From the IMG/VR virus record IMGVR_UViG_3300031963_000006, positions 124,001-188,000 of that record: a DNA stretch of 64,000 nt; one strand, given 5' to 3'. Each line of letters starts with the position of its first letter. Position 1 is the stretch's first letter. A program made the translations under genes and the position numbers. The notes under the pieces were generated by a model that ran no database searches, had not been told where the DNA came from, and worked only from the letters and a program-made list of their open reading frames with translations. Positions 40,611 to 62,325 of this stretch are shown one piece after another.

Positions 40611-41216
40611 ATGATAGAAGTTATCAAATACGGTGATTTCAAGCCGACAGGTAAACAGAAGAAAAAACAACAAATTATATTACAACACACCTCAAGAAAT
40701 ATTGAGGAATATCTCCTTAGTTTGAAATATAGATTTAACGGTGGGTATAAAAAAATACCTAACTACGTTGTCAGTCGAGATGGAAAGATATTACAACTTT
40801 TAGAAAACGAATCTCACTCTAAAATATTTTCTGAAGAAAACATAAACAGAAATTCCATAATTATTTCATTGGAAAATTTGGGATGGTTAGAAAAAGAACC
40901 ATTAAATAATCAATATGTTAACTGGATTGGAGATATTTATAAGGGTGACGCTTATGAAAAAAAATGGAGAGACTATTTTTTTTGGCAACCTTATACCGAA
41001 ACTCAAATAGAATACACTGCTAAATTGTGTAGAAAAATTTTAGATGAGACAGGAATACCAAGAGAGGTTGTGGAACATAACACACGTATAAATGGAGTTG
41101 AGAAATTTAGAGGGGTAACCTCAAAAAGTAATTTCGATAGTGTTTTTACTGATTTGAGTCCGGCCTTTAATTTTGAAACATTTTTAAAATATTTGAATGA
41201 TGAACAATTCACATGA
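40611..41216 (+). CDS. N-acetylmuramoyl-L-alanine amidase-like (Amidase_2) endolysin
   Basis: ILQHTS, NYVVSRDGKILQL, NSIIISLEN, YTETQIE...L, VVEH, DLSPAF pattern; some catalytic positions diverged. Confidence 0.7.
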   Translation: MIEVIKYGDFKPTGKQKKKQQIILQHTSRNIEEYLLSLKYRFNGGYKKIPNYVVSRDGKILQLLENESHSKIFSEENINRNSIIISLENLGWLEKEPLNNQYVNWIGDIYKGDAYEKKWRDYFFWQPYTETQIEYTAKLCRKILDETGIPREVVEHNTRINGVEKFRGVTSKSNFDSVFTDLSPAFNFETFLKYLNDEQFT

Positions 41217-41805
41217 TGAAATTAAAAAATTATTAAAAGCTTCGAGGAGTATGCTCTCGAATAATACCATCAACGAACAGATAAGTGAGATTAAGAATAG
41301 ATATGGTATTATTACAGAACAGGGTTCGGACTTAGCGTCAGATAACATCACTAAAAAAATGAATATTGCTAAGTCTGTTGAGGATAAAATCGAAGACGAT
41401 ACTGAACCCGACAGAGATAAAAGTCAGGGTTATAGAATATCAGGGGGAATAATGGTTTTACACGGAAAAGATTCCTCAGATTTAGAATTGACAACCGACG
41501 ATAAAATCGCGTTCCAAGAAACAATGGATGAGTTTGTTAATGAGGTATCAGACTTGGTAGATTTTAATAAATTAAACGTATATCCAAACAATGTTGAATG
41601 GTCAGGAAAAATTATCGATTTTGATATTGAATTTTTCTTTTCAATAGGTGAAGACGGAGGAATGTACATTAATGGAGATATGATTAAGGCTGATGAAAAT
41701 TTTGTGGAGATGATTAATAAGTTAAAAACTTATTATGATAAGTTCAAGTCAAAATGGGCTAAAGTTTTGGCTTCACGTAAAAAAACAAATAAGGTAGAAA
41801 AATGA
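41197..41805 (+). CDS. Hypothetical protein, putative head-associated
   Basis: 202 aa; TINEQ and IITEQ motifs. Confidence 0.55.
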   Translation: MMNNSHDEIKKLLKASRSMLSNNTINEQISEIKNRYGIITEQGSDLASDNITKKMNIAKSVEDKIEDDTEPDRDKSQGYRISGGIMVLHGKDSSDLELTTDDKIAFQETMDEFVNEVSDLVDFNKLNVYPNNVEWSGKIIDFDIEFFFSIGEDGGMYINGDMIKADENFVEMINKLKTYYDKFKSKWAKVLASRKKTNKVEK

Positions 41806-42149
41806 ACGAAATTTTAAAAACAGTATTGTTATTTGTTATAGTAGCTTTGGTGGGATATTCAGTTTTCTTGACTAATGGTATAAAAACTGATGTTCAATCG
41901 CACTATGATAAGATTGATAGTTTACAAATATCTATAGATTCCGCAACGGCTGTAAACTCAATGATAGACGAAAAATTACTAAAATTAGATGCCGACATAA
42001 ACAATGTGACTAACGAAATTTTGGCGGTAGACCAAACAATAAACGATATTAAAATTCAAACAAATGGTAAGGTTATTAATGTTGATAAGTATACTCATAC
42101 TGAGCTTAAAAAGTTTTTCTCAAAAAGATACAACTCAGCTGGAAATTAG
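41802..42149 (+). CDS. N-anchored coiled-coil protein (i-spanin-like candidate)
   Basis: N-terminal TM then heptads; overlaps next ORF by 86 nt. Confidence 0.5.
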   Translation: MNEILKTVLLFVIVALVGYSVFLTNGIKTDVQSHYDKIDSLQISIDSATAVNSMIDEKLLKLDADINNVTNEILAVDQTINDIKIQTNGKVINVDKYTHTELKKFFSKRYNSAGN

Positions 42150-42468
42150 TACTCAGACTGCACGACTGATTATAAAAGATTTAATTAAGTATGATGGATG
42201 TAAAGACGAGTTGACTCAAGCTTATATAAAAATTGGAAAGCTTGAAGAAAGAGAATCTCTTAAAGACACCATGATAACTTATTTGGAAAAGAAAGATTCA
42301 ACATACCAATTTATTATTCAACAAAAAGATGGTCAAATAGTTGAGTACGGTAAAGTAAATACAAAACTCCAAAGTGAATTGGACTCTAAGAATAAACAAT
42401 TCAAATGGTATAAACGAGGTACTATCGCAGGAGGAGTATTTCTTATACTATTACTATTAGCAATTTAA
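42064..42468 (+). CDS. Signal peptide + coiled coil + C-terminal TM protein (spanin-partner candidate)
   Basis: MVRLLMLISILILSLKSFSQ signal; C-terminal GTIAGGVFLILLLLAI. Confidence 0.5.
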   Translation: MVRLLMLISILILSLKSFSQKDTTQLEISTQTARLIIKDLIKYDGCKDELTQAYIKIGKLEERESLKDTMITYLEKKDSTYQFIIQQKDGQIVEYGKVNTKLQSELDSKNKQFKWYKRGTIAGGVFLILLLLAI

Positions 42469-42470
42469 CT

Positions 42471-42716
42471 ATGGCACTTTCAGATTCAGATAAAAAACAA
42501 ATAGAAGTTATGATTCGAAAGGAAATTAAGGATTTCATCGGAAGTAACACTATGAGACAGTATGAGGATAAGATTTTAGAATTAGTGTCTAAAGAAATCC
42601 GTAGAGGTAAACTTGAAAGTGACACTAAAGAAATAGTAATAAAAGTCTTCAGAGAGTTCTACAATTTTATGTGGTCTCAACGAGGATATTGGGAACCAAG
42701 ATTAAAAAATGCGTAA
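42471..42716 (+). CDS. Hypothetical protein
   Basis: 81-aa helical ORF coupled to neighbours. Confidence 0.6.
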   Translation: MALSDSDKKQIEVMIRKEIKDFIGSNTMRQYEDKILELVSKEIRRGKLESDTKEIVIKVFREFYNFMWSQRGYWEPRLKNA

Positions 42717-43644
42717 AATTAAATTAACCGAGAATATTCTCAAGCAACTTTCTTCAAAAATTTCAGACAATATTTTGTCTAATTCTAATATTATGTCAAC
42801 AAATCCTATCGAAGGAATGAAAGACATTAATGTTTTACAAAAAAAGATAGAGAGTAATGAGGAAATTGAAGAAAAATGGTCTGAAAAATACAAAAAAAGT
42901 ATAGATTGTAACAATCCCAAAGGATTTAGCCAAAAAGCCCATTGCCAAGGAAGAAAAAAGAAAGTAAAGGAAGAGATTGAAGAATCTGAAGTTAAAGACA
43001 TAAAACTGTATGACTTGGCAAAACAACATTCTAAAAGTGATTCTACTGAAAAAATTTCCAAAATATATAATATTCTCAAGAGACAACTTAAAAAAGGGAT
43101 GAAAGTTGAAATGGAACATGAGATGGGTCTTAAAAAGGCTAAGAAAATTGCAATGGACCACCTTAAGGAAGACCCAAAATATTATGATAAACTAGAGAAG
43201 ATAGAGAATAAGGAAGCGACTGGTGCAGGGGTGGCCGGAGGTTTTGTTGGACCTGTAGGATTTAATCCTGATAGTGATTTTGTTAAGAAAAGCTTTAAAG
43301 AGACTCCTAAAAAAATTGAATCAAATGAAGCCACGGGCGCTTCCTCAGCTGGCGCATATGACGCTCCTGGATTTGAAGATGTTAATATGAAAGGTAATCA
43401 TGAACGTGGTTCAGGTAAGTCGTTCAAAAAAACACAGATACCCCAAGGAAAGTTCGTTCAAGTAAAAAAGAAATGTAAAAAGTTTCCTTATTGTAATCAA
43501 GGAGATATTAAAGCTTTAAACATATTTGAAAATAACACTCTCAACAAGGTTATTAAAGATGTTAGTAAAAAGTATAACATCAGTGAACAGGTCGTTAAAA
43601 ATATTATAGAGTACGAATATAATTTGATAAAAGATAAACTATAA
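42709..43644 (+). CDS. Lys/Glu-rich protein with DUF5661-like domain, putative head-internal protein
   Basis: GMKVEMEH...IAMDHLKEDPKYYDKL; KWSEKYKKSIDCNNPKGFSQKAHC; repeated (N/K)EATGA. Confidence 0.6.
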   Translation: MRKIKLTENILKQLSSKISDNILSNSNIMSTNPIEGMKDINVLQKKIESNEEIEEKWSEKYKKSIDCNNPKGFSQKAHCQGRKKKVKEEIEESEVKDIKLYDLAKQHSKSDSTEKISKIYNILKRQLKKGMKVEMEHEMGLKKAKKIAMDHLKEDPKYYDKLEKIENKEATGAGVAGGFVGPVGFNPDSDFVKKSFKETPKKIESNEATGASSAGAYDAPGFEDVNMKGNHERGSGKSFKKTQIPQGKFVQVKKKCKKFPYCNQGDIKALNIFENNTLNKVIKDVSKKYNISEQVVKNIIEYEYNLIKDKL

Positions 43645-43657
43645 CGTAAAAATTAGA

Positions 43658-43665
43658 TATTTATA
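43658..43665 (+). promoter_or_regulatory. Putative late promoter TATTTATA
   Basis: Intergenic, 14 nt before ATG 43680. Confidence 0.55.
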
Positions 43666-43679
43666 AATAAAAAAATCGC

Positions 43680-44897
43680 ATGAAAAAGTCTTTAAACAAC
43701 TATATTAATTCGTTAGTAAATAAAATTATTAACGAAACTATTGAAGAAAGAGCTGACGAATTAGTTACAAAATTAACCGAAGGTGATAAAATGGTTTGTG
43801 AACAATGTGGTGGAGAAACGAGAGAGGGAATTTGTGAACAGTGTTCATCTGGTTCTATGAATGAAACTGATAATTTTGACTATGTTGCTGAAGAAGAGGA
43901 ATTTGGTTCAGACCCGGCAGGTATGATTGATAAATTCTGTGATACAAGTAGTGATGAATATAATAAAGCTGCTTGTAAATATCATGAAGAAAGATTTATG
44001 GGTGGTGAAGTAAGTGAAAAATTACACGGTGGGCAGAAAAAAATTGATGTTGCAGAACCTAAAGGTAAAATTACAGGTGCTGACTTCAAAAAATTAAGAA
44101 GCATGAAAAAAGAAACTGATGAAGAAGTTGAAGAAGGTAATGCTTTTACAGGCGCTTTGGCTAATGCTAAAGAAGAAGGATATGAAACTTTTGAAGTTGA
44201 TGGTAAAAAGTATAATGTTAAAGAATCTATTAGAATGACAGAAAGTGAAATGATTGATTTCATTGAAAAAATTGTTTTGCAGGAGGAGGAAAAATTAAAG
44301 TCTATGGGTAAAACTAAAGGTCTTAATGTTTATCAAAAGGCCCACACCGCTTCAGGAAAGGAAAATAAAGAATACTTACAATCTGTCGTTAAAAAAATGA
44401 AGGATTATTTGAAAGATGGTTCTAAAGGAGAATATGATATGAATCCTGAAATATTTCCAAAGGGAAACGGAGAGTTAGCTAAGATGGATAAAAAGGCTTA
44501 CACACCTTCAGATGCGGTTAAAGATTATACAGATAATTTTATAGCTGCGGGATTAGAAAATCTTGATTATGATGAAATTCATCCTAATGAGGATTGGGTT
44601 GATGACAATGTTGAGGGTTCTTCAAGAACTGGAAACAATCCTGAATGGGTAAATACAGGTAAATCTGATGTTAACAAAAAAAGAAATAAAATTAGAAAAG
44701 ACAACATGTTAGCGAAGGTTAAAAGAAAAGCTTACAATAAGTCACCACAACCAGTCGTTCAAGACACTCAAGATGGAGAAAAGGCTAATAAGATTTTGAT
44801 GAAATTGGAGTCAGTTGATGAAAAAACCACAAAACAAATAAATGAAGAGTTTGAAAGAATGAAAAATTTAATTGGTTATAATCAAAAGACTCAATAA
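43680..44897 (+). CDS. Charged putative head-internal/scaffold-like protein
   Basis: KIINE, KLTE, RMTESE, QINEE motifs; two CEQC pairs; KKIDVAEPKGKITGADFKKLR. Confidence 0.55.
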   Translation: MKKSLNNYINSLVNKIINETIEERADELVTKLTEGDKMVCEQCGGETREGICEQCSSGSMNETDNFDYVAEEEEFGSDPAGMIDKFCDTSSDEYNKAACKYHEERFMGGEVSEKLHGGQKKIDVAEPKGKITGADFKKLRSMKKETDEEVEEGNAFTGALANAKEEGYETFEVDGKKYNVKESIRMTESEMIDFIEKIVLQEEEKLKSMGKTKGLNVYQKAHTASGKENKEYLQSVVKKMKDYLKDGSKGEYDMNPEIFPKGNGELAKMDKKAYTPSDAVKDYTDNFIAAGLENLDYDEIHPNEDWVDDNVEGSSRTGNNPEWVNTGKSDVNKKRNKIRKDNMLAKVKRKAYNKSPQPVVQDTQDGEKANKILMKLESVDEKTTKQINEEFERMKNLIGYNQKTQ

Positions 44898-44944
44898 TAT
44901 ACATTAAAAATATCTTAACTATATTTTATCCATAAGAGTTTCTT

Positions 44945-45412: not shown

Positions 45413-45490
45413 AAAAATTGTTTTTCTCTTTACTACTATCAAGGAAAAATTAATATTAATTATTATAATAAATTTGTAAAAATAATTACG

Positions 45491-45851: not shown

Positions 45852-45855
45852 TCAT

Positions 45856-47239: not shown

Positions 47240-47280
47240 ACTAAATAATAAGAATCATTAAATAATATTAAATATTGATT

Positions 47281-48207
47281 ATGAGTACTGAAAGTTATTA
47301 TGACATTTTAGGTGTTTCAGAAACCGCAACACAAGATGAAATTAAAAAGGCGTATAGAAAGAAGGCGGTAGAACATCACCCTGACAAAGGTGGGGATGAA
47401 CAAGTATTTAAAAAAATATCAGAGGCGTATGATACGGTAGGTGATGAGAATAAACGCAGACAGTATGACGCTCAGAAAAATAATCCGTTTGGAGGAGGGT
47501 TCAATCCTTTTGAAGACTTTTTCTCTCAATTTGGAGGAAGACAACAACGTCAACAAAGACCTCAAGTACCTGATAAGGTTGTAAATCTTGATGTTACGGT
47601 TATTGAATCTTATTTGGGTGTTGATAAAACTATTAATTATAGTCGTAAACACGCTTGTAATACTTGTAGCGGTAGTGGGGGTGATAGGAATACCTGTAGT
47701 AAATGTAATGGACAAGGTTTCGTTACAGTTAGAATGGGTAATGGAATGTTCATTCAAATGATGCAACAGATGTGTGATTTATGTGGAGGACAAGGTTCTG
47801 TATTGACAAGGAGATGCGGTACTTGTAACGGACAAGGTACAAGGTCTGAAATGGAAAGTGTGACATTCAAATTACCGCACGGCTCAGACAACGGTCAATT
47901 CTATAGAATGAATGACTTAGGTGATTATCACAATGGTTTTTACGGAAACTTAGTTATTAAAGTCAACTTGGTTAATTCCGATAACTTTGAAAAAATGGGT
48001 AATGATTTAATTTATAACTCTTACCTCAATTTAGATGATTTAAATAAAAATTCTGTTGGTGTTCCTCATCCTGACGGTGAAATGAGAGTTAACTTTCCTT
48101 TAGAGTTTGATACATCAAAACCCCTTAGAGTAAAATCTAAAGGGTTCAAAAATGGAGGTCAAGGAGACCTTTATGTAAAATTGTTCGTTAAGTTTAAAAG
48201 AGGTTGA
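47281..48207 (+). CDS. dnaJ: DnaJ (Hsp40) chaperone, class A
   Basis: J domain with HPD, short G/F region, four CxxCxGxG motifs, C-terminal GDLYV; ATG 47281. Confidence 0.95.
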   Translation: MSTESYYDILGVSETATQDEIKKAYRKKAVEHHPDKGGDEQVFKKISEAYDTVGDENKRRQYDAQKNNPFGGGFNPFEDFFSQFGGRQQRQQRPQVPDKVVNLDVTVIESYLGVDKTINYSRKHACNTCSGSGGDRNTCSKCNGQGFVTVRMGNGMFIQMMQQMCDLCGGQGSVLTRRCGTCNGQGTRSEMESVTFKLPHGSDNGQFYRMNDLGDYHNGFYGNLVIKVNLVNSDNFEKMGNDLIYNSYLNLDDLNKNSVGVPHPDGEMRVNFPLEFDTSKPLRVKSKGFKNGGQGDLYVKLFVKFKRG

Positions 48208-48457: not shown

Positions 48458-49300
48458 ATGTTAAGCTATATAGGAGGAAAATCAAAAATAGGTAAGTGGA
48501 TAGTTCCATATTACCCAACTGACATGGAAACATACGTGGAAACATTCGGAGGAATGTTTTGGTGTTTCTTTAATATGGATTTGAAACAATATCCCAACCT
48601 AAAAAGGGTTGTTTATAATGACTTCAATCCGCTAAATTACAATCTGTTTATGTGTTTACAGAACCCAACAGTCTTGTTAAACGCAATAAATAATATACCT
48701 TGCCAACAACAAGGAGTTGAGGAGACACCGTCAATCTATCGAGAACAGTTTAACACATTCCAAAAAGAAATATTTGGAGATGGATTTACAATAAACTATC
48801 CAGATTATGATGTCGCCGCTAAGTATGCGTATGTTCTTACACAAGTGTTCAGTGGGTCAAAACCTGAAACAAGTTCGTTTATTGATTTGAAGGGTAAGTA
48901 TAAATCAAAGTATCTTACGTTCAGAGACAAGTTATCAAAGCCTGATTGGGTGGAACACTTTAACAGGATAAGTCATTTTAGATTGGGGGATTTTGAGAAT
49001 GTCATTAAGGAGTTCGATAGCCCAACAACTTATTTCTATTTGGACCCCCCGTATTGGAAGACCGAGAATTATTATTCAAATCACGACTTTGACCGTGACG
49101 ACCACGAGAGACTGGCAAATGTGTTGAAAACTATTGAAGGAAAGTTTTCGTTATCTTACTATGATTTCGTACTTTTGCACGAGTGGTTTCCTGAAGACCA
49201 ATATAGATGGGAAAAGAAAGAATTTGCTAAGGCCGCGGCCGCCAAAAAAGGACAGACCCAAAATATGGGAGAGGAACTACTTATTATGAATTATTTTTAA
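48458..49300 (+). CDS. Dam-like (D12 class) N6-adenine DNA methyltransferase
   Basis: YIGGKS, YVETFGG, YNDF, YLDPPY, ELLIMNY. Confidence 0.9.
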   Translation: MLSYIGGKSKIGKWIVPYYPTDMETYVETFGGMFWCFFNMDLKQYPNLKRVVYNDFNPLNYNLFMCLQNPTVLLNAINNIPCQQQGVEETPSIYREQFNTFQKEIFGDGFTINYPDYDVAAKYAYVLTQVFSGSKPETSSFIDLKGKYKSKYLTFRDKLSKPDWVEHFNRISHFRLGDFENVIKEFDSPTTYFYLDPPYWKTENYYSNHDFDRDDHERLANVLKTIEGKFSLSYYDFVLLHEWFPEDQYRWEKKEFAKAAAAKKGQTQNMGEELLIMNYF

Positions 49301-49309
49301 TTTATTTGA

Positions 49310-49316
49310 TATTTAT
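49310..49316 (+). promoter_or_regulatory. Putative late promoter TATTTAT
   Basis: Intergenic, 17 nt before ATG 49334. Confidence 0.5.
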
Positions 49317-49333: not shown

Positions 49334-50725
49334 ATGAGATTTACACAACTTCTAACAAATTTGATTTTGGAACAATCACGTTTCCAAGTTCTGTATGACA
49401 AAATGGTTAAACCCGCAAAAGGTTCTGACGAGGAGGGTAAAAAGGCAAAAGGATTGATGCCCTTTGAAGTATTAAAACATATTATTTTTGCTGACCCAAC
49501 CACAGTAGGCCCAAGATTTACAGATAATGAAAGTCGCTTGGAGTTTATATTAACTGCCACAGAGGAAGAAATGGAGAAAGTTAAAGTTGGTAAGTATACT
49601 CAATGGTTGTTGAAGAATTTTGTGGCTCCTACGTTTGATGACATAGATGAGAGAGCTAATATAGAAAAAGGTACTACCGAGTATAAAAGAATGATGAAAG
49701 ATTATCAAAGTTTGTTCTTGGAAGACTTACACAAAATTACCGAAGACCTTAAAAAGTACGAGAGATTTAAGAATCAGTTACCTCAAGATAAAAGAGATAT
49801 CAATAAAATCTCCGCTAGTGAACTTTATGATTTGGTTAAAGATTTTAAATTAGAAAAGACCAAAGCATCCAAAGAGGAAAAAGAACAAGCTAAAACATCA
49901 TACCAATATCCTGGTAGTGAAATCATGTACAGAGGTTCTGATTGGACTTTGATTAAGATTGAAGATAAAGGTGAGATTGGAAAAAATGCCGCAATATTTT
50001 TCGGAGGTTACCAAGATGGAGATAATGGTGAATCAAGATGGTGTACATCCGCACCTGGATTAAGTTACTTTAATACATACATTAAAGATGGACCTTTGTA
50101 TGTTGTTTTACCAAACGATGATAAAGGACAAGTTGGTAAAAGAACAGGACTTCCAGTTGAAAGATATCAGTTTCACTTCCCATCTAATCAATTTATGGAT
50201 AGACACGATAGAACTGTAAGTTTAGTTGAATTGTTAAATGGAAAAATGTCTGAACTTAAAGAGTTCTTTAAACCTGAATTTGCAAAAGGTTTGGTAAGTA
50301 AAGGTGGAAATAAAGTTGAAGTTAATTATCCTGATAGTTCGGCGGGTAAGTTTATTGCTCTATACGGATTTGAAGAATTATTTGAAAGTTTACCTGATAC
50401 AATTGAACATCTTATTGTTACAAACAAATCAAAAGAAAATATTGCTTTGGATGTTCCAGAAAGTATCACAAGATTTAAGAACCTTGATGCGTTACTAATG
50501 TCAAATATTGTTAGAACATTACCTGAAAATTTGGGTGACCTGAAAAATTTGAAGTTTTTGAATTTGGCAAATAACAAAGATTTAGTATCTTTGCCAGAAT
50601 CAATCAAGGACATACCTAATTTGGCCCTACTCAACCTTAAAGGAGCAAATCCAAATGTTGAGATACCACCGGCACTTAAAGAGGTATTGTCTGACGAAGG
50701 AGAAGGATTTTACTATCTTACTTAA
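49334..50725 (+). CDS. Protein with WCT...YF..Y domain and C-terminal leucine-rich repeats
   Basis: SRWCTSA...YFNTY...GPLYV...YQFHF..QFMD; LPENLGDLKNLKFLNLANNKDLVSLPESI LRRs; N-terminal LILEQ. Confidence 0.7.
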   Translation: MRFTQLLTNLILEQSRFQVLYDKMVKPAKGSDEEGKKAKGLMPFEVLKHIIFADPTTVGPRFTDNESRLEFILTATEEEMEKVKVGKYTQWLLKNFVAPTFDDIDERANIEKGTTEYKRMMKDYQSLFLEDLHKITEDLKKYERFKNQLPQDKRDINKISASELYDLVKDFKLEKTKASKEEKEQAKTSYQYPGSEIMYRGSDWTLIKIEDKGEIGKNAAIFFGGYQDGDNGESRWCTSAPGLSYFNTYIKDGPLYVVLPNDDKGQVGKRTGLPVERYQFHFPSNQFMDRHDRTVSLVELLNGKMSELKEFFKPEFAKGLVSKGGNKVEVNYPDSSAGKFIALYGFEELFESLPDTIEHLIVTNKSKENIALDVPESITRFKNLDALLMSNIVRTLPENLGDLKNLKFLNLANNKDLVSLPESIKDIPNLALLNLKGANPNVEIPPALKEVLSDEGEGFYYLT

Positions 50726-54633: not shown

Positions 54634-54957
54634 ATGGAAATAGGAACGCAAGAACTAAAGGAAAAAATTCAAAAAGGGGAAAAATTAATTGTCGACTTTT
54701 ATGGAAGTTGGTGTGGTCCCTGTAAAATCTTAAAACCAATTTATGAAAAAGTTGCTAAAGATTTGGAAAATCAAAAATCTGAAGTAAAACTTTACACTAT
54801 GGATGTCGATAAAAATAGAGAAATGGCGGCGTCATTAGGTATTAGAAGTGTGCCAACCGTAAAAAGTTTTGCGAATGGTAAAGAAATGAACACTAAAGTG
54901 GGATTGTTACAGGAAAATATGATATTAGATTTAGCAAAAAATTTATTAAATGGATAA
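54634..54957 (+). CDS. trxA: Thioredoxin
   Basis: VDFYGSWCGPCK, IRSVPT. Confidence 0.92.
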   Translation: MEIGTQELKEKIQKGEKLIVDFYGSWCGPCKILKPIYEKVAKDLENQKSEVKLYTMDVDKNREMAASLGIRSVPTVKSFANGKEMNTKVGLLQENMILDLAKNLLNG

Positions 54958-55231
54958 GATTGTAGTTGTGTTCACAATGAAAACATGTGGATTCTGTGAA
55001 CAATTTAAAACAAAATTGACTGAGAATAACATTGGGTTCGTAAATAGAGATATTAACGAAAACAAAGAGGAATATGACGCTTTCGTGAAAGCCACGGGAA
55101 ATGATTTTGTTCCTTCTTTTATGGTTATAGAATCTCCGAATGAAAATCCAAAGTCGTATTTGTACGCACCTGGAAAAGATTTCGAAGATTTGGACAAAGC
55201 TTTAGGTATTATCAAAGAACACTTAGGTTAG
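54950..55231 (+). CDS. Glutaredoxin/NrdH-like redoxin
   Basis: VFTMKTCGFC, RDI, FVP. Confidence 0.8.
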   Translation: MDKIVVVFTMKTCGFCEQFKTKLTENNIGFVNRDINENKEEYDAFVKATGNDFVPSFMVIESPNENPKSYLYAPGKDFEDLDKALGIIKEHLG

Positions 55232-56838: not shown

Positions 56839-56924
56839 ATCTTTTTATTTTTAAACGTTTATATATCATAAATATCTAAATTTGGTATATATTGTAAATA
56901 TTTTATTTGAATTAACAAATATTT

Positions 56925-58325
56925 ATGATTATGACAAAAAGTCTTAGTTTTAAAAATACCGTAAAAAATATATTGATAGAACAGAATGAAGAAGAGTTCT
57001 ACAAAATTTCACCTGAAGAGTTTACAGAACTAATGAAGTTTGGAAGTTATAATGGTAAAGGTGTGAGTAAACTTAAAATGTTCGGAGGTAAACCAATATG
57101 GATTACTGGTAATTTAGATTTGTCAAATACACCAACAGACTCGTTGGGTAATGTTAAATATGTTGAGGGTAGATTAGATATCAGTAGAACAAATATTAGT
57201 GATTTGTCAGGTGTTAAGGTTAAAGGGTATATTTGGGATGGAGGTTCACCTATTGAAAAAAAGAGACTTGCGGCCATTTTAAAGGAAAAGATGAGAGAGG
57301 CCGATGAAAGAAGACAAAGAGATGAATGGAGTATAGATGGAGGAGACGAAATAGGTTTAAGAGCCCAAGCGTTATATAAAAATTTGATAAATGATGAAAA
57401 AATTTTCGCCCCAACAGGAGAATACGTAGGAGAAATAGAAGGTTTAAAGGCCGACTTGGAGGAATTAACTATTAGGTATAATGAAACTGAAGGGGAAGAC
57501 GATGAATTATATAATAAGATAAGTGATATAGAAGAGAGAATTAACGAACTCCAACAAGGAGTGGTGGATGTATATAACATAGTACCAATGAATTATAACT
57601 ATTATGGTTTACCTCAGTTTGAAGTTATTGGTGTTGATGATTTAGTAGGGGAAGAATATGCGGTTGGTGATGAAAGTGAAATGGATGCCGCGGCACTTCA
57701 ATACGCTAAAAATTATCTTGATGAAGCCGGTGTTGAAGGTTTAAGAGATTATTTTATTGAGGACAATTTAGATACCGATGCGATTGAACAATATTTCAGA
57801 GATTTTTATGATGATGATGTTAGGAATAATCTTGAGGTTTATTTTGACGAAAGTGAACTACCTAACACAGAAGAACAAGAAGAAAGGAAACAGGAATTAG
57901 AGGAATACATTGACAAAGCAGAAGGAGTAGTTAAAAAATTTGAACAAAAACAAGAAGACCTTAAAAATAAAATTGAAGACCCCGATGAATATACTAAACA
58001 GTATAACGAGATTCAATCAAAAATAGATATCATTCAAAATCATATTGATAACTCACAAGAGGAAATTGATAATATAGAATCCACAGGACAGATAACTGAG
58101 GAGATGATTGAAGAAAAGATTGAGGATATGGTATCAGATAAAATGAGTGACCCGAGGGGTTCTTTATCTGAATTTGGTATGGATATTAGTGAATATGTTG
58201 ATATGGATTCACTGGCTGAAGCGCTTGCTGAAAGTGATGGATATGAAGTATTAGCATCTTATGATGGAAGTTATGATGGTGAATACATTGACAACAAGTT
58301 TTACTACGTAATCAGAGTTAACTAA
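56925..58325 (+). CDS. Very acidic protein with short LRR-like repeats and coiled coils, putative head-internal protein
   Basis: NILIEQ leader; ITGNLDLSNT / VEGRLDISRT repeats; TATTTAT at 56920-56926 suggests start 56931. Confidence 0.6.
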   Translation: MIMTKSLSFKNTVKNILIEQNEEEFYKISPEEFTELMKFGSYNGKGVSKLKMFGGKPIWITGNLDLSNTPTDSLGNVKYVEGRLDISRTNISDLSGVKVKGYIWDGGSPIEKKRLAAILKEKMREADERRQRDEWSIDGGDEIGLRAQALYKNLINDEKIFAPTGEYVGEIEGLKADLEELTIRYNETEGEDDELYNKISDIEERINELQQGVVDVYNIVPMNYNYYGLPQFEVIGVDDLVGEEYAVGDESEMDAAALQYAKNYLDEAGVEGLRDYFIEDNLDTDAIEQYFRDFYDDDVRNNLEVYFDESELPNTEEQEERKQELEEYIDKAEGVVKKFEQKQEDLKNKIEDPDEYTKQYNEIQSKIDIIQNHIDNSQEEIDNIESTGQITEEMIEEKIEDMVSDKMSDPRGSLSEFGMDISEYVDMDSLAEALAESDGYEVLASYDGSYDGEYIDNKFYYVIRVN

Positions 58326-58351
58326 ATCTTTTTTTTATCACTAATATCAAC

Positions 58352-58359
58352 TATATTTG
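58352..58359 (+). promoter_or_regulatory. Bacteroidota -7 element TATATTTG
   Basis: 7 nt before ATG 58367; no exact -33 TTTG. Confidence 0.5.
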
Positions 58360-58366
58360 TGATAAC

Positions 58367-59158
58367 ATGTCTAAAAAAACCAAAAATAATAATTCGTTTG
58401 TAATGGATACCGATTGGCTCTTCAATGGGACAATCGACGCCGAACAAAAAGAATATGTACTTTTAGGTTATTTCCAAAAAATGAATAAAAATTTGGAGGA
58501 GATGAGAATTTACCCTATGTTTACCGAACTTTCAATACATTTGGGTAATATTCAAACATTGTTAACTCAAAACAAAATATTATATACTGACAAAAAGTTA
58601 ACTACAGATAATGATGAAATCTTCATTAAAGATTTGAAGGTTAAAGATATACCTGATTTAACTGATGAGGAATTTGCCGAGTATCAAAAAATAATCAAAG
58701 TAAGTCAACCAATGTTATTTGATTATTTTAATATTGCCAAATCATTGTGGTCTTTAGCTTATGACTCAGTAACTGTAAATGCTAAAAGAAATAAAAAGAA
58801 TTTAACAAGTAAGACAGGATTTTATTACACAATTTATAAAGATAATCTTTATGTTTGGAGATATACGATGAAAAAAATAAGGGGTTTTAACAACCAAATT
58901 AGAACCGATGCTAAGTTGATGTTTAGTGGAAGTCCTGATTCAACTGTTATTAAGATTATTTCACAAACATCACCAACATATCGAAAAAACAACGAAAGTA
59001 AGTTACCTGTGATGGAAGTTGTTTGTCATGAAATGTTTCCATTAAATGAAACATTGGTACCAATAATGAAAAGAAAAGTAGTATCTTTGATACACCAAAG
59101 TATGAAAGTTGAAAAGTTATTAGAAGAAAATAAAACTGTTGAAAATGGGGTTCAATAA
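58367..59158 (+). CDS. Hypothetical protein
   Basis: 263 aa; IDAEQKEYVLLGYFQ...YP.F.EL..H and PLNETLVP.MKRK look like conserved motifs. Confidence 0.65.
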   Translation: MSKKTKNNNSFVMDTDWLFNGTIDAEQKEYVLLGYFQKMNKNLEEMRIYPMFTELSIHLGNIQTLLTQNKILYTDKKLTTDNDEIFIKDLKVKDIPDLTDEEFAEYQKIIKVSQPMLFDYFNIAKSLWSLAYDSVTVNAKRNKKNLTSKTGFYYTIYKDNLYVWRYTMKKIRGFNNQIRTDAKLMFSGSPDSTVIKIISQTSPTYRKNNESKLPVMEVVCHEMFPLNETLVPIMKRKVVSLIHQSMKVEKLLEENKTVENGVQ

Positions 59159-59318
59159 AATAGTAGTCGGAAAAAATAAAATAAACGAAATTGAGTCGGA
59201 TTTAAATTTGATTGAAATTTATAAAAAGTACGACGCCATGATATTTGAATCTAATGAAATAAGAAATAAATTTAAATTTTTTGAAAATGAATACAATCAA
59301 AAAAAAGTTATTGGATAA
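59145..59318 (+). CDS. 57-aa protein missed by the ORF track
   Basis: MGFNKIVVGK...NQKKVIG; overlaps both neighbours. Confidence 0.5.
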   Translation: MGFNKIVVGKNKINEIESDLNLIEIYKKYDAMIFESNEIRNKFKFFENEYNQKKVIG

Positions 59319-59472
59319 GTTAAGAAGACCCGTCCACATTACGTTTATTTCTAAACACATTTTAAAACTTTCTATGGAAGAAACTGAAAAAGTTATAAAT
59401 GAAATGGTGGATGAAGGGTTGGTAGAAGAAAGTAAGTATGGTAAAGGTTATTATGTTGTAAAAAGTATATAA
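59287..59472 (+). CDS. Small winged-helix-like protein
   Basis: HITFISKHILKLSMEETEKVINEMVDEGLVEE..GKGYY helix-turn-helix/wing pattern; ATG 59287. Confidence 0.5.
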   Translation: MNTIKKKLLDKLRRPVHITFISKHILKLSMEETEKVINEMVDEGLVEESKYGKGYYVVKSI

Positions 59473-59476
59473 AATT

Positions 59477-59701
59477 ATGAAAGAAATGGTGAATCATCCT
59501 GACCATTACGGTGGTGAGGAAAACACATATGAAGTAGTAAAAGTATGTGAGGCTTGGGGACTTGACATGGATGCTTATCTATTCAATGTGGTTAAATACG
59601 TGGCAAGAGCGGGCAAGAAAGATTCAGATAAGGAACTCCAAGACCTAAAGAAGGCCCTTTGGTATTTAGATAGAAAAATTCAAAATCTTGAAAAAAAATG
59701 A
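59477..59701 (+). CDS. DUF3310 family protein (T7 gp1.7 nucleotide-kinase-like)
   Basis: VNHPDHY, NVVKYVARAGKK, QDLKKALWYL. Confidence 0.85.
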   Translation: MKEMVNHPDHYGGEENTYEVVKVCEAWGLDMDAYLFNVVKYVARAGKKDSDKELQDLKKALWYLDRKIQNLEKK

Positions 59702-59847
59702 ATTTGATTTGGTGGGTGTTTGTTTTTTCAATATTTTTTTATCCATTGTTTATATTTGTGGTAATTTATACTAACAAATATCCAAACAATAGATTTTCGA
59801 AGTGGTGGAAAAAACACATTATAGATAAAAATGAAAATTATGATTGA
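59698..59847 (+). CDS. 49-aa membrane peptide missed by the ORF track
   Basis: MNLIWWVFVFSIFFYPLFIFVVIY...FSKWWKKHII; ATGA-coupled to DUF3310. Confidence 0.5.
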   Translation: MNLIWWVFVFSIFFYPLFIFVVIYTNKYPNNRFSKWWKKHIIDKNENYD

Positions 59848-60697
59848 AAACTATATAAATAAAGTAATTAACGGAGATTGCATCAAAGTTATGGGTGAAA
59901 TGCCCGAAGGTTCTATTGACTTGATTGTTACTAGTCCACCCTATGGAGTGAACATTGCATATGACACCCATGATGATGATATGGAAATTAATGAGTATCT
60001 TGAGTTCAGTAAGAACTGGCTAACCGAGGCTTATAAAGTTTTGAAAGACGATGGAAGAATTGCCTTGAATATCCCCTACGAGATTAACCGTCAAGAAAAG
60101 GGTGGTCGTATATTTTTTGTATCCGAGGTTTATCAGATTATGAAACAAATTGGATTTAAATTCTTTGGAATTGTTGACCTTGAAGAGGATAGTCCCCACA
60201 GAAGTAAGACAACGGCTTGGGGTAGTTGGATGAGTCCGTCAAGTCCATATATCTATAACCCAAAAGAGTGTGTAATACTTGCATATAAGAAAAACCACAT
60301 TAAGAAAGTTAAGGGTCAACCACAATGGAAGGGCGAACCAATAACAACCGAGGAAGGTAAGACAAAGATGTTGTACACCGAACAGGACAAAAAGGAATTT
60401 ATGGAATTGGTGTTCGGGCAATGGAAGTATCTTAATGACTCAAGACCACTAACCAAGGCAACTTTCTCAATGGACATCCCAACCAAGGCAATTAAGATAT
60501 TGTCATATAAGAATGACATAATATTAGACCCCTTCAATGGTAGTGGAACAAGTTGTGTGGCTGCAGAAATTTTAGATAGAAGGTGGATTGGTATTGAACT
60601 TTCTGAAAATTATACTAAAATTGCTACAGAAAGGATACAATCTTTCGTTGACCAAAAAAGGCAACAAGTTTTAGAGTTTGAAAATGGGGGTGAATAA
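59831..60697 (+). CDS. Beta-class N4-cytosine/N6-adenine DNA methyltransferase
   Basis: DLIVTSPPY precedes ILDPFNGSGT and IGIEL. Confidence 0.9.
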   Translation: MKIMIENYINKVINGDCIKVMGEMPEGSIDLIVTSPPYGVNIAYDTHDDDMEINEYLEFSKNWLTEAYKVLKDDGRIALNIPYEINRQEKGGRIFFVSEVYQIMKQIGFKFFGIVDLEEDSPHRSKTTAWGSWMSPSSPYIYNPKECVILAYKKNHIKKVKGQPQWKGEPITTEEGKTKMLYTEQDKKEFMELVFGQWKYLNDSRPLTKATFSMDIPTKAIKILSYKNDIILDPFNGSGTSCVAAEILDRRWIGIELSENYTKIATERIQSFVDQKRQQVLEFENGGE

Positions 60698-60714
60698 CCT
60701 CCATTTTTGTTTTT
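60681..60714 (+). terminator. Intrinsic terminator overlapping the MTase stop
   Basis: AAAATGGGGGT-GAATA-ACCTCCATTTT then T-rich tail. Confidence 0.65.
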
Positions 60715-60719
60715 GTGAA

Positions 60720-60727
60720 TATTTATA
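60720..60727 (+). promoter_or_regulatory. Putative late promoter TATTTATA
   Basis: Right after terminator, 12 nt before ATG 60740. Confidence 0.55.
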
Positions 60728-60739
60728 TAAAAAAAATCT

Positions 60740-60925
60740 ATGAGAGGTAAAATTCTATCTGAAGAACAATTTAAAGATAAGTTAATCCAAATTTATAATG
60801 AGGAGAAACATTCTTTGGTCAAAGAAAAAATTCAAATGTATGTTGAAAAAAGAAAGTCTTCCGTTAACGAAGAGGTTCAAGATTCATTAATAACATTGAA
60901 GAATATTTTTGGAGGTAAAAAGTAA
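60740..60925 (+). CDS. 61-aa protein composed mostly of (I/L/V)xE motifs
   Basis: KILSEEQ, IYNEE, SVNEE; TAATG-coupled to the DHH gene. Confidence 0.55.
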   Translation: MRGKILSEEQFKDKLIQIYNEEKHSLVKEKIQMYVEKRKSSVNEEVQDSLITLKNIFGGKK

Positions 60926-62325
60926 TGAAAAAAATACTCTCAGAAAGTGGTATAAGAGATATCAAAGCTTTATCTCAAAGATATCCAAAGGCTGAAATAT
61001 ATTTTCACCAAGACCTTGATGGGGTCACTACGGCCATAGCCATGAAATCATATCTTGAACAACATGGTATTGAGGTAATTGACGCTCACGTAATTCAATA
61101 TGGTGACAAAGAGTTTTCAATAAAGAAAAACGACGCAACAGGTGATGTGATGCCGGTTCTTGTTGATTTTGCCCACGGTAAACCAATGTTCGTTATTCAT
61201 ACTGACCACCACGATAGACAAGCTGGCGCCGAAGATACCAAATCAACATCTTTCAGACAATCTCGTTCAAATGTAGAGACAATATCACAGATTGTTTCAC
61301 CTAAAGAAATATTTCCAGAAAAAGATATTTTATTAATTTCAACAGTTGATTCTGCCAACTTCGCAAAATATGATATTACTCCTGAACAAGTAATGAATTA
61401 TTTGTTTAAGTTTGATAAAGACTCGTCATTATTAAAGAATAAAATGGCGATGGGTATGGTTGCTAATAAATTATTATTGGCGTTTAAGAACAAACCTGGA
61501 TTCTTAGAAAGATTAGTTATGGAATCAACTCCATCTTTAACTAATATTCTTGTTAATATAAGACAAATTATGAAGGAAAAGGGATATGCTGATATTCCCG
61601 AACTTGAAAAACATAAGGAGGATTATGTTCAAAAAATGAAGAGTTATCCTGAAGTATCTAATAATATAATAGTTCAATACGGTGGTGGTAGTATGATGAA
61701 ACCAGGTTCATATGATAGATATACACCATTTAGAAATAACCCTGAGGCGGACTTTTTAGTTATTGCCTGGCCAATGGGACTGTTACAGGCTTCTTGTAAT
61801 CCATTTAAAAAAGATAGAGAATTGAAAGGTGTTAACTTAGGTGATATTGCCCAAGAGGTATTATCTAAATGGGAAGGACAATTAAAGGACAGACAAATAC
61901 CACTATCAACTATCAAATGGATATCTGAAGACGTTAAAGGTTTTGGACCTGAGTCAGTTGGATTTACCTTCAAAGATTTTGTGGCTTTATATGGTAAGAA
62001 CTATAAGTCAATGCAAAATGGAAAAGAAGAGTTGATTAACATAGGTAATTTGATGGAAAAACCATTTGAACAGTTGACCGATGAAGAGAGACAAATATTA
62101 GATGATGTTACGGTTAGTGCTTGGGATGTCATTCAATCCAATTCAGGGGGGCACAAATGTATTACAAACATTTCAGGTTTAATGTATATGGGAAGGTCCA
62201 ATAGACCACCACAAGGAAAATACAAGTATGACCCCGAGAGAGAGGATTCCCCATACGTTAAATTTCTTAAGATGTTACAAAGAGAATTTGTTAGAGTATT
62301 ACAGGAAAAGATTGGTCAGTCTTAA
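60925..62325 (+). CDS. DHH-family phosphoesterase
   Basis: YFHQDLDG, LVDFAH, HTDHHD, STVDSA, C-terminal SGGH. Confidence 0.75.
   Translation: MKKILSESGIRDIKALSQRYPKAEIYFHQDLDGVTTAIAMKSYLEQHGIEVIDAHVIQYGDKEFSIKKNDATGDVMPVLVDFAHGKPMFVIHTDHHDRQAGAEDTKSTSFRQSRSNVETISQIVSPKEIFPEKDILLISTVDSANFAKYDITPEQVMNYLFKFDKDSSLLKNKMAMGMVANKLLLAFKNKPGFLERLVMESTPSLTNILVNIRQIMKEKGYADIPELEKHKEDYVQKMKSYPEVSNNIIVQYGGGSMMKPGSYDRYTPFRNNPEADFLVIAWPMGLLQASCNPFKKDRELKGVNLGDIAQEVLSKWEGQLKDRQIPLSTIKWISEDVKGFGPESVGFTFKDFVALYGKNYKSMQNGKEELINIGNLMEKPFEQLTDEERQILDDVTVSAWDVIQSNSGGHKCITNISGLMYMGRSNRPPQGKYKYDPEREDSPYVKFLKMLQREFVRVLQEKIGQS

What the first reader, a model, noticed from the sequence alone, without database searches (positions are those of the whole stretch)
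41197..62325. Shared N-terminal (I/L)xE leaders on late genes suggest a capsid-targeting and protease-cleavage system for injected cargo
Seen: unrelated proteins begin with a basic/hydrophobic leader ending (I/L)xE: MRKIKLTE (42709), ..VNKIINE (43680), MRFTQLLTNLILEQ (49334), ..VKNILIEQ (56925), MRGKILSEEQ (60740), MKKILSES (60925) and TINEQ/IITEQ (41197). Most follow a TATTTAT motif. Established: T4 internal proteins carry a short capsid-targeting leader removed by gp21 after (I/L)xE. Inference: this phage packages diverse cargo (DHH enzyme, LRR proteins, acidic proteins) into the head through a portable leader and delivers it at infection.
Basis: partly seen in the sequence, partly recalled or inferred. 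Interest (0 to 1): 0.65.

Follow-up and report, generated by a model that had tools for sequence, protein, structure and literature searches.

The report
Portable N-terminal leaders ending in (I/L)xE
An abundant uncultured ~300-kb T4-related jumbo phage puts the same short N-terminal tag, always ending in Ile/Leu-x-Glu, on about a tenth of its otherwise unrelated late proteins, which fits a T4-style "load into the capsid, then clip off the tag" system that no experiment has yet tested.

Summary
All seven N-termini are at the stated coordinates.

- **Bare motif:** [IL]xE in the first 25 aa is only weakly enriched (36% against a 26% background).
- **Real signal:** it is a strictly N-terminal leader, MK(I/Y)IITE-S or the 22-aa MKKIIRLTESDLTRIVKRVI-x-E. 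It occurs on 17 of 141 ORFs of this contig and 91 ORFs in four related genomes, and never internally.
- **Where similarity stops:** in 103 independent IMG/VR ORFs, similarity ends at I-x-E. Position 20 is Ile in 91 of 103, position 21 is free, position 22 is Glu in 99 of 103, and sequence is near-random from position 24.
- **Level of selection:** synonymous codons vary at conserved residues, so selection acts on the peptide.
- **Timing:** leader genes follow the TATTTAT motif that also precedes portal, protease and scaffold genes. No gene with a host-type promoter carries the leader.
- **Protease context:** complete relatives (296-322 kb) encode a T4 gp21-family protease. Their gp23-type capsid protein has LINE|A where T4 has its LTE|A cleavage site.

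Cleavage, packaging and injection are inferred only. This contig (43% complete) lacks the head module. I rate it a new variant of the T4 capsid-targeting system.

The parts
41197..41805 (+). 202-aa acidic protein. Its N-terminal ~41 aa hold TINE (aa 24-27) and GIITE|Q (Glu at aa 41, codon ends at 41319). This is the weakest of the seven as a leader.
   Evidence: G(I/L)(I/L)TE-Q is conserved in all 4 orthologs and is followed by variable acidic sequence. There is no TATTTAT upstream.
42709..43644 (+). 311-aa protein with the main-family leader MRKIKLTE|N (Glu codon ends at 42732) and a DUF5661 domain at aa 116-168.
   Evidence: Leader profile hit of 20-23 bits at the start Met. DUF5661 at E 3.8e-10. 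The best related proteins in the other genomes lack this N-terminal part, while another leader protein (h152) shares aa 52-95, which indicates modular shuffling.
43658..43664 (+). TATTTAT late-promoter-like motif, 15 nt upstream of the 43680 ORF.
   Evidence: It is the most enriched upstream 8-mer, 20-40 fold. It also precedes portal, protease and scaffold genes in G003.
43680..44897 (+). 405-aa acidic, Cys-rich protein. Its leader helix ends in ..LVNKIINE|T (Glu at aa 19, codon ends at 43736).
   Evidence: KI(I/L)xE-T is conserved in 4 orthologs. It belongs to the 126-protein cluster that shares only N-terminal similarity.
49310..49316 (+). TATTTAT motif, 17 nt upstream of the 49334 ORF.
49334..50725 (+). 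463-aa protein whose leader is MRFTQLLTNLILE|Q (Glu at aa 13, codon ends at 49372). It has a sub-threshold LRR hit near the C-terminus.
   Evidence: NLI(L/T)E is conserved in 3 orthologs. LRR_14 at E 9.6e-4, below the cut-off.
56925..58325 (+). 466-aa very acidic protein (pI 4.2) with a decayed long leader, ..KNTVKNILIE|Q (Glu at aa 19, codon ends at 56981).
   Evidence: Orthologs h208 and j56 carry the canonical leader (RKLRLTESELYNVIKKIIKE|T). The second (I/L)xE is the part that this ORF has kept. pI.
60720..60726 (+). TATTTAT motif, 13 nt upstream of the 60740 ORF. It probably drives both 60740 and 60925.
60740..60925 (+). 61-aa basic protein with the leader MRGKILSE|EQ (Glu codon ends at 60763).
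   Evidence: Leader profile hit at the start. Independent JGI and ENA gene calls on other contigs also call this ORF. No ortholog was found in the three complete relatives.
60925..62325 (+). 466-aa DHH-like protein (DLDG and HTDHHD motifs) with a 7-aa leader, MKKILSE|SG (Glu codon ends at 60945).
   Evidence: In 115 homologs the N-terminus reads M[KR][KN][LI][LI]-x-E-S-G. The x position varies freely and Glu is kept at the same position in 104. The Pfam DHH hit is below the cut-off. The AF2 model was unusable.

Best explanation
The window comes from an uncultured T4-related jumbo myophage. Its contig is 126.8 kb and about 43% complete, and complete relatives are 296-322 kb.

A set of its late genes encodes proteins with unrelated bodies that share a short N-terminal leader. 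Three leader families were found.
- The main family has a 7-aa form, MK(I/Y)IITE|S, and a 22-aa form, MKKIIRLTE|SDLTRIVKRVI-x-E|Q.
- A second family reads MNLQENIxRIxxMMGVIxE| or MKELIKKILRE|.
- A third, small family ends in ..VISE|Q.

All three end in (I/L/V)-x-Glu.

Proposed mechanism, by analogy with T4 internal proteins:
1. The proteins are made together with the head proteins.
2. The basic, hydrophobic leader docks them onto the assembling scaffolding core, possibly onto the very acidic tract of the 528-aa scaffold-like protein.
3. The capsid shell closes around them.
4. The gp21-family prohead protease cuts after the Glu and frees the cargo inside the head.
5. At least part of the cargo leaves with the DNA at infection.

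Shown here: the leader exists, is strictly N-terminal, is portable, is selected at the peptide level and ends at (I/L)xE. It is tied to the late (morphogenesis) promoter motif. The lineage has a T4-type protease, and its capsid protein has a homologous (I/L)xE|A maturation site.

Inferred only: binding to the core, cleavage, presence in virions and ejection.
For: **Strictly N-terminal.** All 17 strong profile hits in a six-frame scan of the contig, and all 91 hits in four genomes, start at a Met.

**Portable.**
- The 22-aa leader sits on 21 proteins of 84-525 aa with unrelated downstream parts.
- 1105 protein pairs are similar only at the N-terminus, against 33 for an internal control window. 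The same test recovers real Sec/lipoprotein signal peptides as a separate cluster, which serves as a positive control.
- Some paralogs have the same domain with and without the leader: j123 and j67, and h11, h119 and h130.

**Ends at I-x-E.** In 103 distinct ORFs from other IMG/VR contigs, at positions the search pattern did not force:
- position 20 is Ile in 91 of 103;
- position 21 is free (entropy 2.9 bits);
- position 22 is Glu in 99 of 103 (entropy 0.24 bits);
- from position 24 onward entropy is 3.3 bits rising to about 3.8-4.1 bits, near random.

The 4 exceptions end four residues later, in IL(K/Q)E. The DHH-like protein shows the same pattern, with P3 as L/I, P1 as E and P2 free.

**Selection on the peptide.** Conserved Ser uses TCA, TCT, TCG and AGT, Thr uses four codons, and Ile uses three, in roughly genome-wide proportions.

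**Outside the fold.** In the AF2 model of the small family (pLDDT 92.4), residues 1-6 are coil with lower confidence, and helix 1 starts at Glu7.

**Late expression.**
- TATTTAT is the top upstream 8-mer.
- It precedes the portal, core, protease and scaffold genes.
- The leader is on 59 of 341 TATTTAT genes against 0 of 89 host-promoter-type genes.

**Protease context.**
- Peptidase_S77 scores over the cut-off in G002, G003 and G004.
- The protease is 34% identical to T4 gp21, and the LNHP and SSRG segments (which I recall, not tested here, as holding gp21's catalytic His and Ser) are kept.
- The gene order is portal, core, protease, scaffold, capsid protein.
- The capsid protein's N-terminal domain ends in FLINE|A, aligned with T4's FLTE65|A66.
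- The ORF in the gp67/68 position has 13 [IL]xE sites against 3.9 expected (z = 5.2), second highest of 975 proteins.

**Established for T4.** gp21 cuts after L/I-X-E, and a 10-aa capsid targeting sequence suffices for packaging (PMC9026906). T-even internal proteins are diverse and share only that targeting sequence (PMC3012670).
Against: - There is no proteomic, structural or biochemical evidence for any step.
- The protease and head module are absent from the window's own contig. They are also absent from the 173-kb contig of the same strain, which ends just short of where the head module lies in G003. The protease is inferred from relatives that are 82-88% identical in the adaptor protein.
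- The leader has no sequence similarity to T4's MKTYQEFIAE. It is absent from T4 and from the nearest deposited huge phage, LR756508.1.
- Tagged proteins are mostly acidic (median pI 5.4), whereas T4 internal proteins are basic.
- 19-29 tagged proteins per complete genome by the profile, and more by N-terminal clustering, is far beyond T4's handful.
- In the short-leader family, conservation continues after Glu7. That helix belongs to the fold.
- [IL]xE is a common tripeptide here, so the enrichment of conserved sites in ortholog groups is modest (1.8-fold, p = 0.002).
Confidence: 0.6

Rival explanations
1. The leader does send proteins into the prohead and is clipped off. However, the tagged proteins are internal scaffold, 'inner body' or DNA-organising components, or are degraded and expelled. 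They are not effectors delivered to the host.
For: T4 core proteins gp22, gp67 and gp68 are cut at many L/I-X-E sites and mostly leave the head (PMC9026906). Heads of phiKZ-like giant phages hold about 50 different proteins (abstract of PMC7411985, listed). Several tagged proteins lie in or beside structural modules: g10 between the sheath and tube genes, g19 after the 2378-aa protein, and h369 and h377-h380 beside the head module.
Against: Tandem, fast-diverging arrays of small paralogs and enzyme-like cargo (the DHH-like protein) look more like accessory or arms-race proteins than architecture. Most tagged proteins have no excess of internal [IL]xE sites, unlike h364.
Confidence: 0.2
2. The leader is an uncleaved N-terminal interaction or sorting tag unrelated to the capsid. 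It might be a chaperone-recruiting (DnaK/DnaJ-type) or partner-binding motif, or a tag for another late assembly site.
For: Basic residues flanking a run of Ile/Leu resemble Hsp70-binding peptides (general knowledge). The phage encodes a protein that looks like a J-domain protein at 47275-48207, judged only from its YYDILGV...KKAYRKK N-terminus. The long leader looks amphipathic from its sequence pattern, which would suit protein-protein docking (not modelled here).
Against: This does not explain why three unrelated leader families all stop at (I/L/V)-x-Glu with a free middle residue. That is the specificity of the protease family this lineage encodes and the site type in its own capsid protein.
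Confidence: 0.13
3. The shared 5' ends are a by-product of recombination or duplication of promoter-plus-start cassettes, or a translation-initiation signal for near-leaderless late mRNAs. The peptide itself would have no function.
For: TATTTAT often lies only 4-5 nt before the ATG, so some of these mRNAs may be leaderless. Many leader genes sit in tandem arrays. Mobile promoter cassettes are known in T4-type phages (general knowledge).
Against: Synonymous codons vary freely at the conserved residues, including Ser encoded by both TCN and AGT. Amino-acid conservation extends 22 residues and stops at a defined residue. The leader is also kept in genes without their own promoter.
Confidence: 0.05
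4. The pattern is a chance recurrence of a common tripeptide in an AT-rich, Ile/Lys/Glu-rich proteome.
For: [IL]xE occurs in 26% of internal 25-aa windows. The 41197 and 49334 cases were not picked up by the leader profile.
Against: as above. Control tripeptides ([IL]xD, VxE, [AGS]xE) are not enriched at N-termini.
Confidence: 0.02

Closest known systems
Bacteriophage T4 capsid targeting sequence (CTS) of internal proteins IPI, IPII, IPIII and Alt, removed by the gp21 prohead protease
   Same: - It is a short leader at the extreme N-terminus that starts with MK and ends in hydrophobic-x-Glu.
- It is attached to otherwise unrelated, fast-evolving proteins.
- It is expressed with the head genes.
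- The lineage has a gp21-family (Peptidase_S77) protease, a gp20-type portal and a gp23-type capsid protein whose N-terminal domain ends at a homologous (L/I)xE|A site.
- T4 facts are from PMC9026906 and PMC3012670, and the T4 CTS was seen directly.
   Different: - There is no sequence similarity to MKTYQEFIAE.
- There are at least three leader families and two lengths (7 and 22 aa). The long form has two candidate sites.
- About 5-12% of ORFs are tagged (17-29 per genome by the profile, more by clustering), against a handful in T4.
- The cargo is mostly acidic, not basic.
- Nothing has been tested experimentally.
Propeptides of head and inner-body proteins of phiKZ-like giant phages (phiKZ gp175, 201phi2-1, SPN3US gp245)
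   Same: - Many (tens of) head proteins are processed after Glu by a distant gp21 relative.
- Propeptides can hold several redundant sites.
- A large mass of proteins is ejected (PMC9026906; abstracts of PMC7411985 and PMC10052503, listed).
   Different: - Those phages are reported, as I recall, to use a small residue (S/A/G) at P3. Here [AGS]xE is not enriched at N-termini (ratio 1.01) and P3 is Ile/Leu.
- Their propeptides are long and are not a shared portable tag.
- The protease here is a clear S77 member (87 bits), not a remote homolog.
Sec and lipoprotein signal peptides
   Same: They are portable N-terminal leaders removed by a dedicated protease. The same clustering test recovers them in these genomes as a separate cluster of 11 proteins.
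   Different: The leader described here has no long hydrophobic core and no signal-peptidase site. It has charged residues throughout and ends in Glu.

Membership tests
T4-type CTS / gp21-processed head cargo | The phage encodes a gp21-family (Peptidase_S77) prohead protease. | tested here: met
   Found over the Pfam cut-off in the three complete relatives G002, G003 and G004 (E 1e-23 to 1e-25). It matches PHROG 207, head maturation protease, and is 34% identical to T4 gp21 with the LNHP and SSRG segments kept. It was not found on the window's own 43%-complete contig or on the 173-kb contig of the same strain, which ends just short of where the head module lies in G003.
T4-type CTS / gp21-processed head cargo | A T4-type head module, with a capsid protein matured at an (L/I)xE site. 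| tested here: met
   The gene order in G003 is portal, core-like ORFs, protease, acidic scaffold-like ORF, gp23-type capsid protein. FLINE60|A61 is conserved in three genomes and lies where T4 has FLTE65|A66. Actual cleavage was not observed.
T4-type CTS / gp21-processed head cargo | The leader lies at the extreme N-terminus and is portable between unrelated proteins. | tested here: met
T4-type CTS / gp21-processed head cargo | The leader ends in L/I-X-E with a free middle residue. | tested here: met
   Position 20 is Ile in 91 of 103 ORFs, position 21 has entropy 2.9 bits, and position 22 is Glu in 99 of 103. The DHH-like protein family shows the same pattern. The second and third leader families also end in [ILV]xE.
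T4-type CTS / gp21-processed head cargo | The tagged proteins are expressed late, together with head proteins. | tested here: inconclusive
   The evidence is at promoter-motif level only. TATTTAT precedes head genes, and the leader is on 59 of 341 genes with that motif against 0 of 89 genes with a host-type promoter motif. No transcript data were examined.
T4-type CTS / gp21-processed head cargo | Sequence homology of the leader to the T4 CTS (MKTYQEFIAE). | tested here: not met
   The T4 CTS is seen twice in the T4 record. It shares nothing with the leader here beyond the initial MK and the terminal hydrophobic-x-E. The leader pattern is absent from T4.
T4-type CTS / gp21-processed head cargo | The proteins are physically in the virion, have a processed N-terminus and are ejected into the host. 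| not testable with these tools
   This needs virion proteomics, N-terminomics and infection assays.
T4-type CTS / gp21-processed head cargo | The cargo is small and basic (DNA-associated), like IPI-IPIII. | tested here: not met
   Median pI of leader proteins is 5.4, and their lengths range from 52 to 525 aa.
phiKZ-type propeptide processing (small residue at P3) | Cleavage motif with S/A/G at P3. | tested here: not met
   Conserved [AGS]xE is not enriched at N-termini (ratio 1.01), whereas [IL]xE is enriched 1.81-fold.
Sec/lipoprotein signal peptide | An uninterrupted hydrophobic core followed by a signal-peptidase site. | tested here: not met
   The leader is charged throughout. True signal peptides form their own cluster, for example the ORF at 42064-42468.

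The most novel reading that the evidence does not exclude
A very abundant clade of uncultured ~300-kb T4-related jumbo phages uses interchangeable N-terminal 'zip codes' to load dozens of different proteins into each capsid and deliver them with the DNA. There are at least three leader families, all ending in (I/L/V)xE for the gp21-type protease, and about a tenth of the proteome is tagged. The cargo is mostly small, acidic, rapidly diversifying paralogs plus enzymes. If so, the injected proteome of uncultured phages could be read directly from sequence, and this would be by far the largest CTS-tagged cargo set known.
Probability: 0.4. Interest if true: 0.75.

Novelty: new variant of a known kind. 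Interest (0 to 1): 0.62.

Why it matters
Proteins that phages inject ahead of or with their DNA, such as T4 IPI* and Alt, are front-line counter-defence and takeover tools. They are almost impossible to recognise in uncultured phages. If this leader marks capsid cargo, a simple sequence rule would list the likely injected proteins of a clade with thousands of related metagenome proteins and many contigs. The rule is a start Met, the leader, and (I/L)xE. That list would nominate new anti-defence candidates, including a new small fold with no PDB match. It would also provide a compact natural tag for loading foreign proteins into large capsids, as is done with the T4 CTS. The hypothesis can be tested directly by one virion mass-spectrometry experiment or one protease assay.

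Tried and rejected
- **Near-identity and protein searches against deposited phages.** The region and a structural protein gave no match. A tblastn search with the 24-aa leader also gave none, so no cultured relative with a virion proteome was found.
- **Wide protein search with the 112-aa leader protein.** It returned only close relatives and no names.
- **Pfam and PHROGs.** Neither has a family covering the leader.
- **Literature.** A text search for the motif strings found nothing relevant.
- **Protein atlas and fold searches of the small family.** They returned only uncharacterised uncultured-phage proteins, with no PDB match at E <= 0.001.
- **AF2 of the DHH-like protein.** The model was unusable (pLDDT 47). 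A PDB sequence search with its profile found nothing. The DHH label therefore rests on a sub-threshold Pfam hit plus the DLDG and HTDHHD motifs.
- **Looking for the protease of the window's own strain.** It is absent from the contig. The 173-kb contig of the same strain stops just short of where the head module lies in G003. The 239-kb metagenome contig that carries the identical DHH-like gene is not held for searching.
- **Wider distribution of the leader.** The leader pattern is absent from T4 and from the 484-kb uncultured phage LR756508.1, whose capsid protein is the closest deposited one. The leader sequence is therefore clade-specific.
- **Rejected explanations.** An RNA-level or cassette-only explanation is rejected on codon evidence. 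Chance is rejected. A signal peptide is rejected.

Full report
**What the window is**

The window is bases 42627-106626 of a 126,766-bp linear IMG/VR virus contig rated 43% complete. GC content is about 31%.

The contig encodes a contractile-tail phage. It has a tail sheath, tube, baseplate hub and head-tail adaptor, and large fibre-like genes. The adaptor protein has about 600 related IMG/VR contigs. These include three complete genomes of 296-322 kb, called G002, G003 and G004 here, with G003 bounded by direct terminal repeats. There is also a 173-kb contig of the same strain, G001.

The capsid protein of the relatives is a distant homolog of T4 gp23. The nearest deposited genome is an unannotated 484-kb uncultured phage. 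The window therefore belongs to an abundant, uncultured, T4-related jumbo phage clade.

**Checking the observation**

The bare tripeptide is common. [IL]xE occurs in the first 25 residues of 51 of 141 ORFs, against 25.8% of internal windows.

- Outside the window, a tandem family of about ten small genes begins MKYIITESQ. Other genes begin MKKVIRLTESDL, MKIKITELQL or MKNILISEKQL.
- A profile built from these and run over all six reading frames finds 17 strong hits on the contig. Each one sits at a start Met, and none is internal.
- In the four genomes there are 91 hits: 17 of 141, 29 of 412, 26 of 374 and 19 of 386 ORFs. All are at a Met. Some of those Mets lie downstream of my longest-ORF start call.

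**Portability**

I ran an unbiased test on pairs of proteins.

| Region compared | Similar pairs | Pairs with no detectable similarity elsewhere |
|---|---|---|
| First 35 aa | 1738 | 1105 |
| Internal window 60-95 | 481 | 33 |

The N-terminus-only pairs form several clusters:

| Cluster size | Content |
|---|---|
| 126 proteins | The main leader |
| 26 proteins | A second leader, MNLQENIxRIxxMMGVIxE or MKELIKKILRE |
| 11 proteins | Ordinary signal peptides, which serve as a positive control |
| 6 and 5 proteins | Two clusters of shared fibre N-terminal domains |
| 4 proteins | A leader ending in ..VISE-Q |

The 22-aa form, MKKIIRLTESDLTRIVKRVI-x-E, sits on 21 proteins of 84-525 aa whose downstream parts are unrelated. 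Some paralogs carry the same domain with and without the leader.

**Where the similarity ends**

A DNA pattern covering only the first 17 residues retrieved more than 120 stretches from IMG/VR. These yielded 103 distinct ORFs. At the positions the pattern did not force:

| Position | Finding |
|---|---|
| 20 | Ile in 91 of 103 |
| 21 | Free (entropy 2.9 bits) |
| 22 | Glu in 99 of 103 (entropy 0.24 bits) |
| 23 | Mostly Gln, Asn or Ser |
| 24 onward | 3.3 bits at 24, then 3.8-4.1 bits, near random |

The four exceptions run four residues further and end in IL(K/Q)E. In 115 homologs of the 60925 protein, the N-terminus reads M[KR][KN][LI][LI]-x-E-S-G with a freely varying x. This matches the L/I-X-E rule of T4 gp21 (PMC9026906).

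**Peptide or RNA?**

At the conserved residues, synonymous codons follow genome-wide usage. Ser is encoded by TCA, TCT, TCG and AGT. Thr uses four codons and Ile uses three. Selection therefore acts on the peptide.

A confident AF2 model of the small family (pLDDT 92.4, pTM 0.83) leaves residues 1-6 as a lower-confidence coil outside the fold and starts helix 1 at Glu7. The fold has no PDB match.

**Timing**

(A/G)TATTTAT(A/T) is the most enriched 8-mer upstream of ORFs, at 20-40 fold. In G003 it precedes the portal, a core-like ORF, the protease, the scaffold-like ORF and other head-module genes. It is therefore best read as the late, morphogenesis promoter.

| Gene class (four genomes) | Genes | Carry the leader | [IL]xE in first 25 aa |
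|---|---|---|---|
| Behind TATTTAT | 341 | 59 | 48% |
| Behind host-type TAnnTTTG | 89 | 0 | 29% |

The differences are significant at p = 5e-7 for the leader and p = 0.001 for the tripeptide. In the window, the ORFs at 43680, 49334 and 60740 have the motif. The 60925 ORF abuts 60740, which suggests co-transcription.

**The protease side**

- Pfam Peptidase_S77 is absent from this incomplete contig. It scores over the cut-off in all three complete relatives.
- The G003 protease is 34% identical to T4 gp21 and keeps the LNHP and SSRG segments. I recall these as holding gp21's catalytic His and Ser, which was not tested here.
- It lies in the T4 gene order: portal, small core-like ORFs, protease, a 528-aa very acidic scaffold-like ORF, then the capsid protein.
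- The capsid protein's N-terminal domain ends in FLINE60|A61 in all three genomes. This lies where T4 gp23 has FLTE65|A66, its known maturation site.
- The ORF in the gp67/68 position has 13 [IL]xE sites against 3.9 expected (z = 5.2), second highest of 975 proteins. That is what a core protein destined for multi-site cutting should look like.
- In 147 ortholog groups, conserved [IL]xE is 1.8-fold enriched in the first 45 alignment columns (p = 0.002). [IL]xD, VxE and [AGS]xE are not enriched.

**The seven proteins one by one**

| ORF start | Assessment |
|---|---|
| 42709 | Clear member of the main leader family. The best related proteins in the other genomes lack this N-terminal part, so it looks like a modular addition. 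|
| 43680 | Keeps KI(I/L)xE-T in four orthologs and clusters with the main leader. |
| 49334 | Keeps NLI(L/T)E in three orthologs. |
| 56925 | A decayed long leader. Its orthologs carry the canonical one, and the second (I/L)xE is the conserved part. |
| 60740 | Weak profile hit. Independently called as a gene on other contigs, but has no ortholog in the three relatives. |
| 60925 | Keeps its 7-aa leader across 115 homologs. |
| 41197 | Keeps G(I/L)(I/L)TE-Q near residue 40. Weakest case. |

**Interpretation**

The best explanation is a T4-style capsid-targeting and propeptide system (confidence about 0.6). What is shown and what is only inferred are set out in the Best explanation section.

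Points against are these:
- There is no direct evidence for any step.
- The head module is missing from this strain's available contigs. G001 extends 81 kb to the left and stops just short of where that module lies in G003.
- The leader has no sequence similarity to the T4 CTS. The leader pattern is absent from T4 and from LR756508.1.
- The cargo is acidic.
- The number of tagged proteins is very large.

The rivals are as follows. The tagged proteins may be architectural or discarded head-internal proteins rather than injected effectors. The leader may be an uncleaved interaction tag. It may be a promoter and start-codon cassette by-product, which the codon evidence argues against. Or the pattern may be chance, which is rejected for the family as a whole.

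**Comparison and novelty**

It works like the T4 CTS/gp21 system and shares its machinery by homology. The leader itself is not homologous to T4's. It comes in several families and lengths, and it marks about 5-12% of ORFs.

A text search for the motif strings found no description of it. Pfam and PHROGs have no family for it. I class it as a new variant of a known kind.

No genetic code other than table 11 was used. No reads tools were used.

Noticed in passing
window 62871-63302 (+): The phage encodes an SmpB (tmRNA-binding protein) homolog, by a precomputed Pfam PF01668 hit on identical contigs. A host-type TATATTTG promoter-like motif lies just upstream. No tmRNA search was run.
   Followed up: partly
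whole contig and G003, e.g. upstream of G000:C1:121378 (outside the window) and many G003 leader genes: In many leader genes the TATTTAT motif ends only 4-5 nt before the ATG. If it acts like a -10 element, these late mRNAs would be leaderless or nearly so.
   Followed up: partly
G000:C1:118958-122702, minus strand (just beyond the window's right end); loci L004:12459-16203: A tandem array of about ten paralogous genes of 100-130 aa all begin MKYIITESQ. Several have their own TATTTAT. The AF2 model is confident (pLDDT 92) and the fold has no PDB match.
   Followed up: yes
G003 head module, L101:12571-13290 (-): A 239-aa ORF between the portal and protease genes has 13 [IL]xE sites against 3.9 expected (z = 5.2). 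It is a likely gp67/68-like core protein that is cut to pieces.
   Followed up: partly
G000:C1:118447-118938 (outside the window) and G003, G002 and G004 ORFs such as h146-h153 and h161-h163: There is a second leader family of 26 proteins (MNLQENIxRIxxMMGVIxE or MKELIKKILRE) and a third of 4 proteins (..GYKxGxVISE-Q). Both also end in [ILV]xE. A further possible type..EEKNRILxxH..YLSE-Q, was seen in h378, h380 and j223.
   Followed up: partly
window 42064-42468 (+) and ten ORFs in related genomes: These proteins have Sec- or lipoprotein-type signal peptides (..LSLKSFSQ), so the phage appears to make exported proteins.
   Followed up: no
window 18615-31264, minus strand: A block of very large fibre-like genes (71, 849, 1223, 422 and 1634 aa) shares N-terminal modules with fibre genes of relatives. 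It shows strong GC skew and AT skew at 22-28 kb.
   Followed up: no
IMG/VR loci (three ORFs listed): A leader variant, MKKIIRLTESDLHRIVKESVxRIL(K/Q)E, ends four residues later than the standard form, again in ILxE. Which phage group carries it was not determined.
   Followed up: no
window 47275-48207, 48458-49300, 54634-55231, 59831-60697: Judged from sequence motifs or precomputed Pfam hits only, the region also holds a J-domain-like protein, two DNA methyltransferase-like genes, and thioredoxin- and glutaredoxin-like genes. They are interspersed with the leader genes, so the region is a mosaic rather than a purely late block.
   Followed up: no
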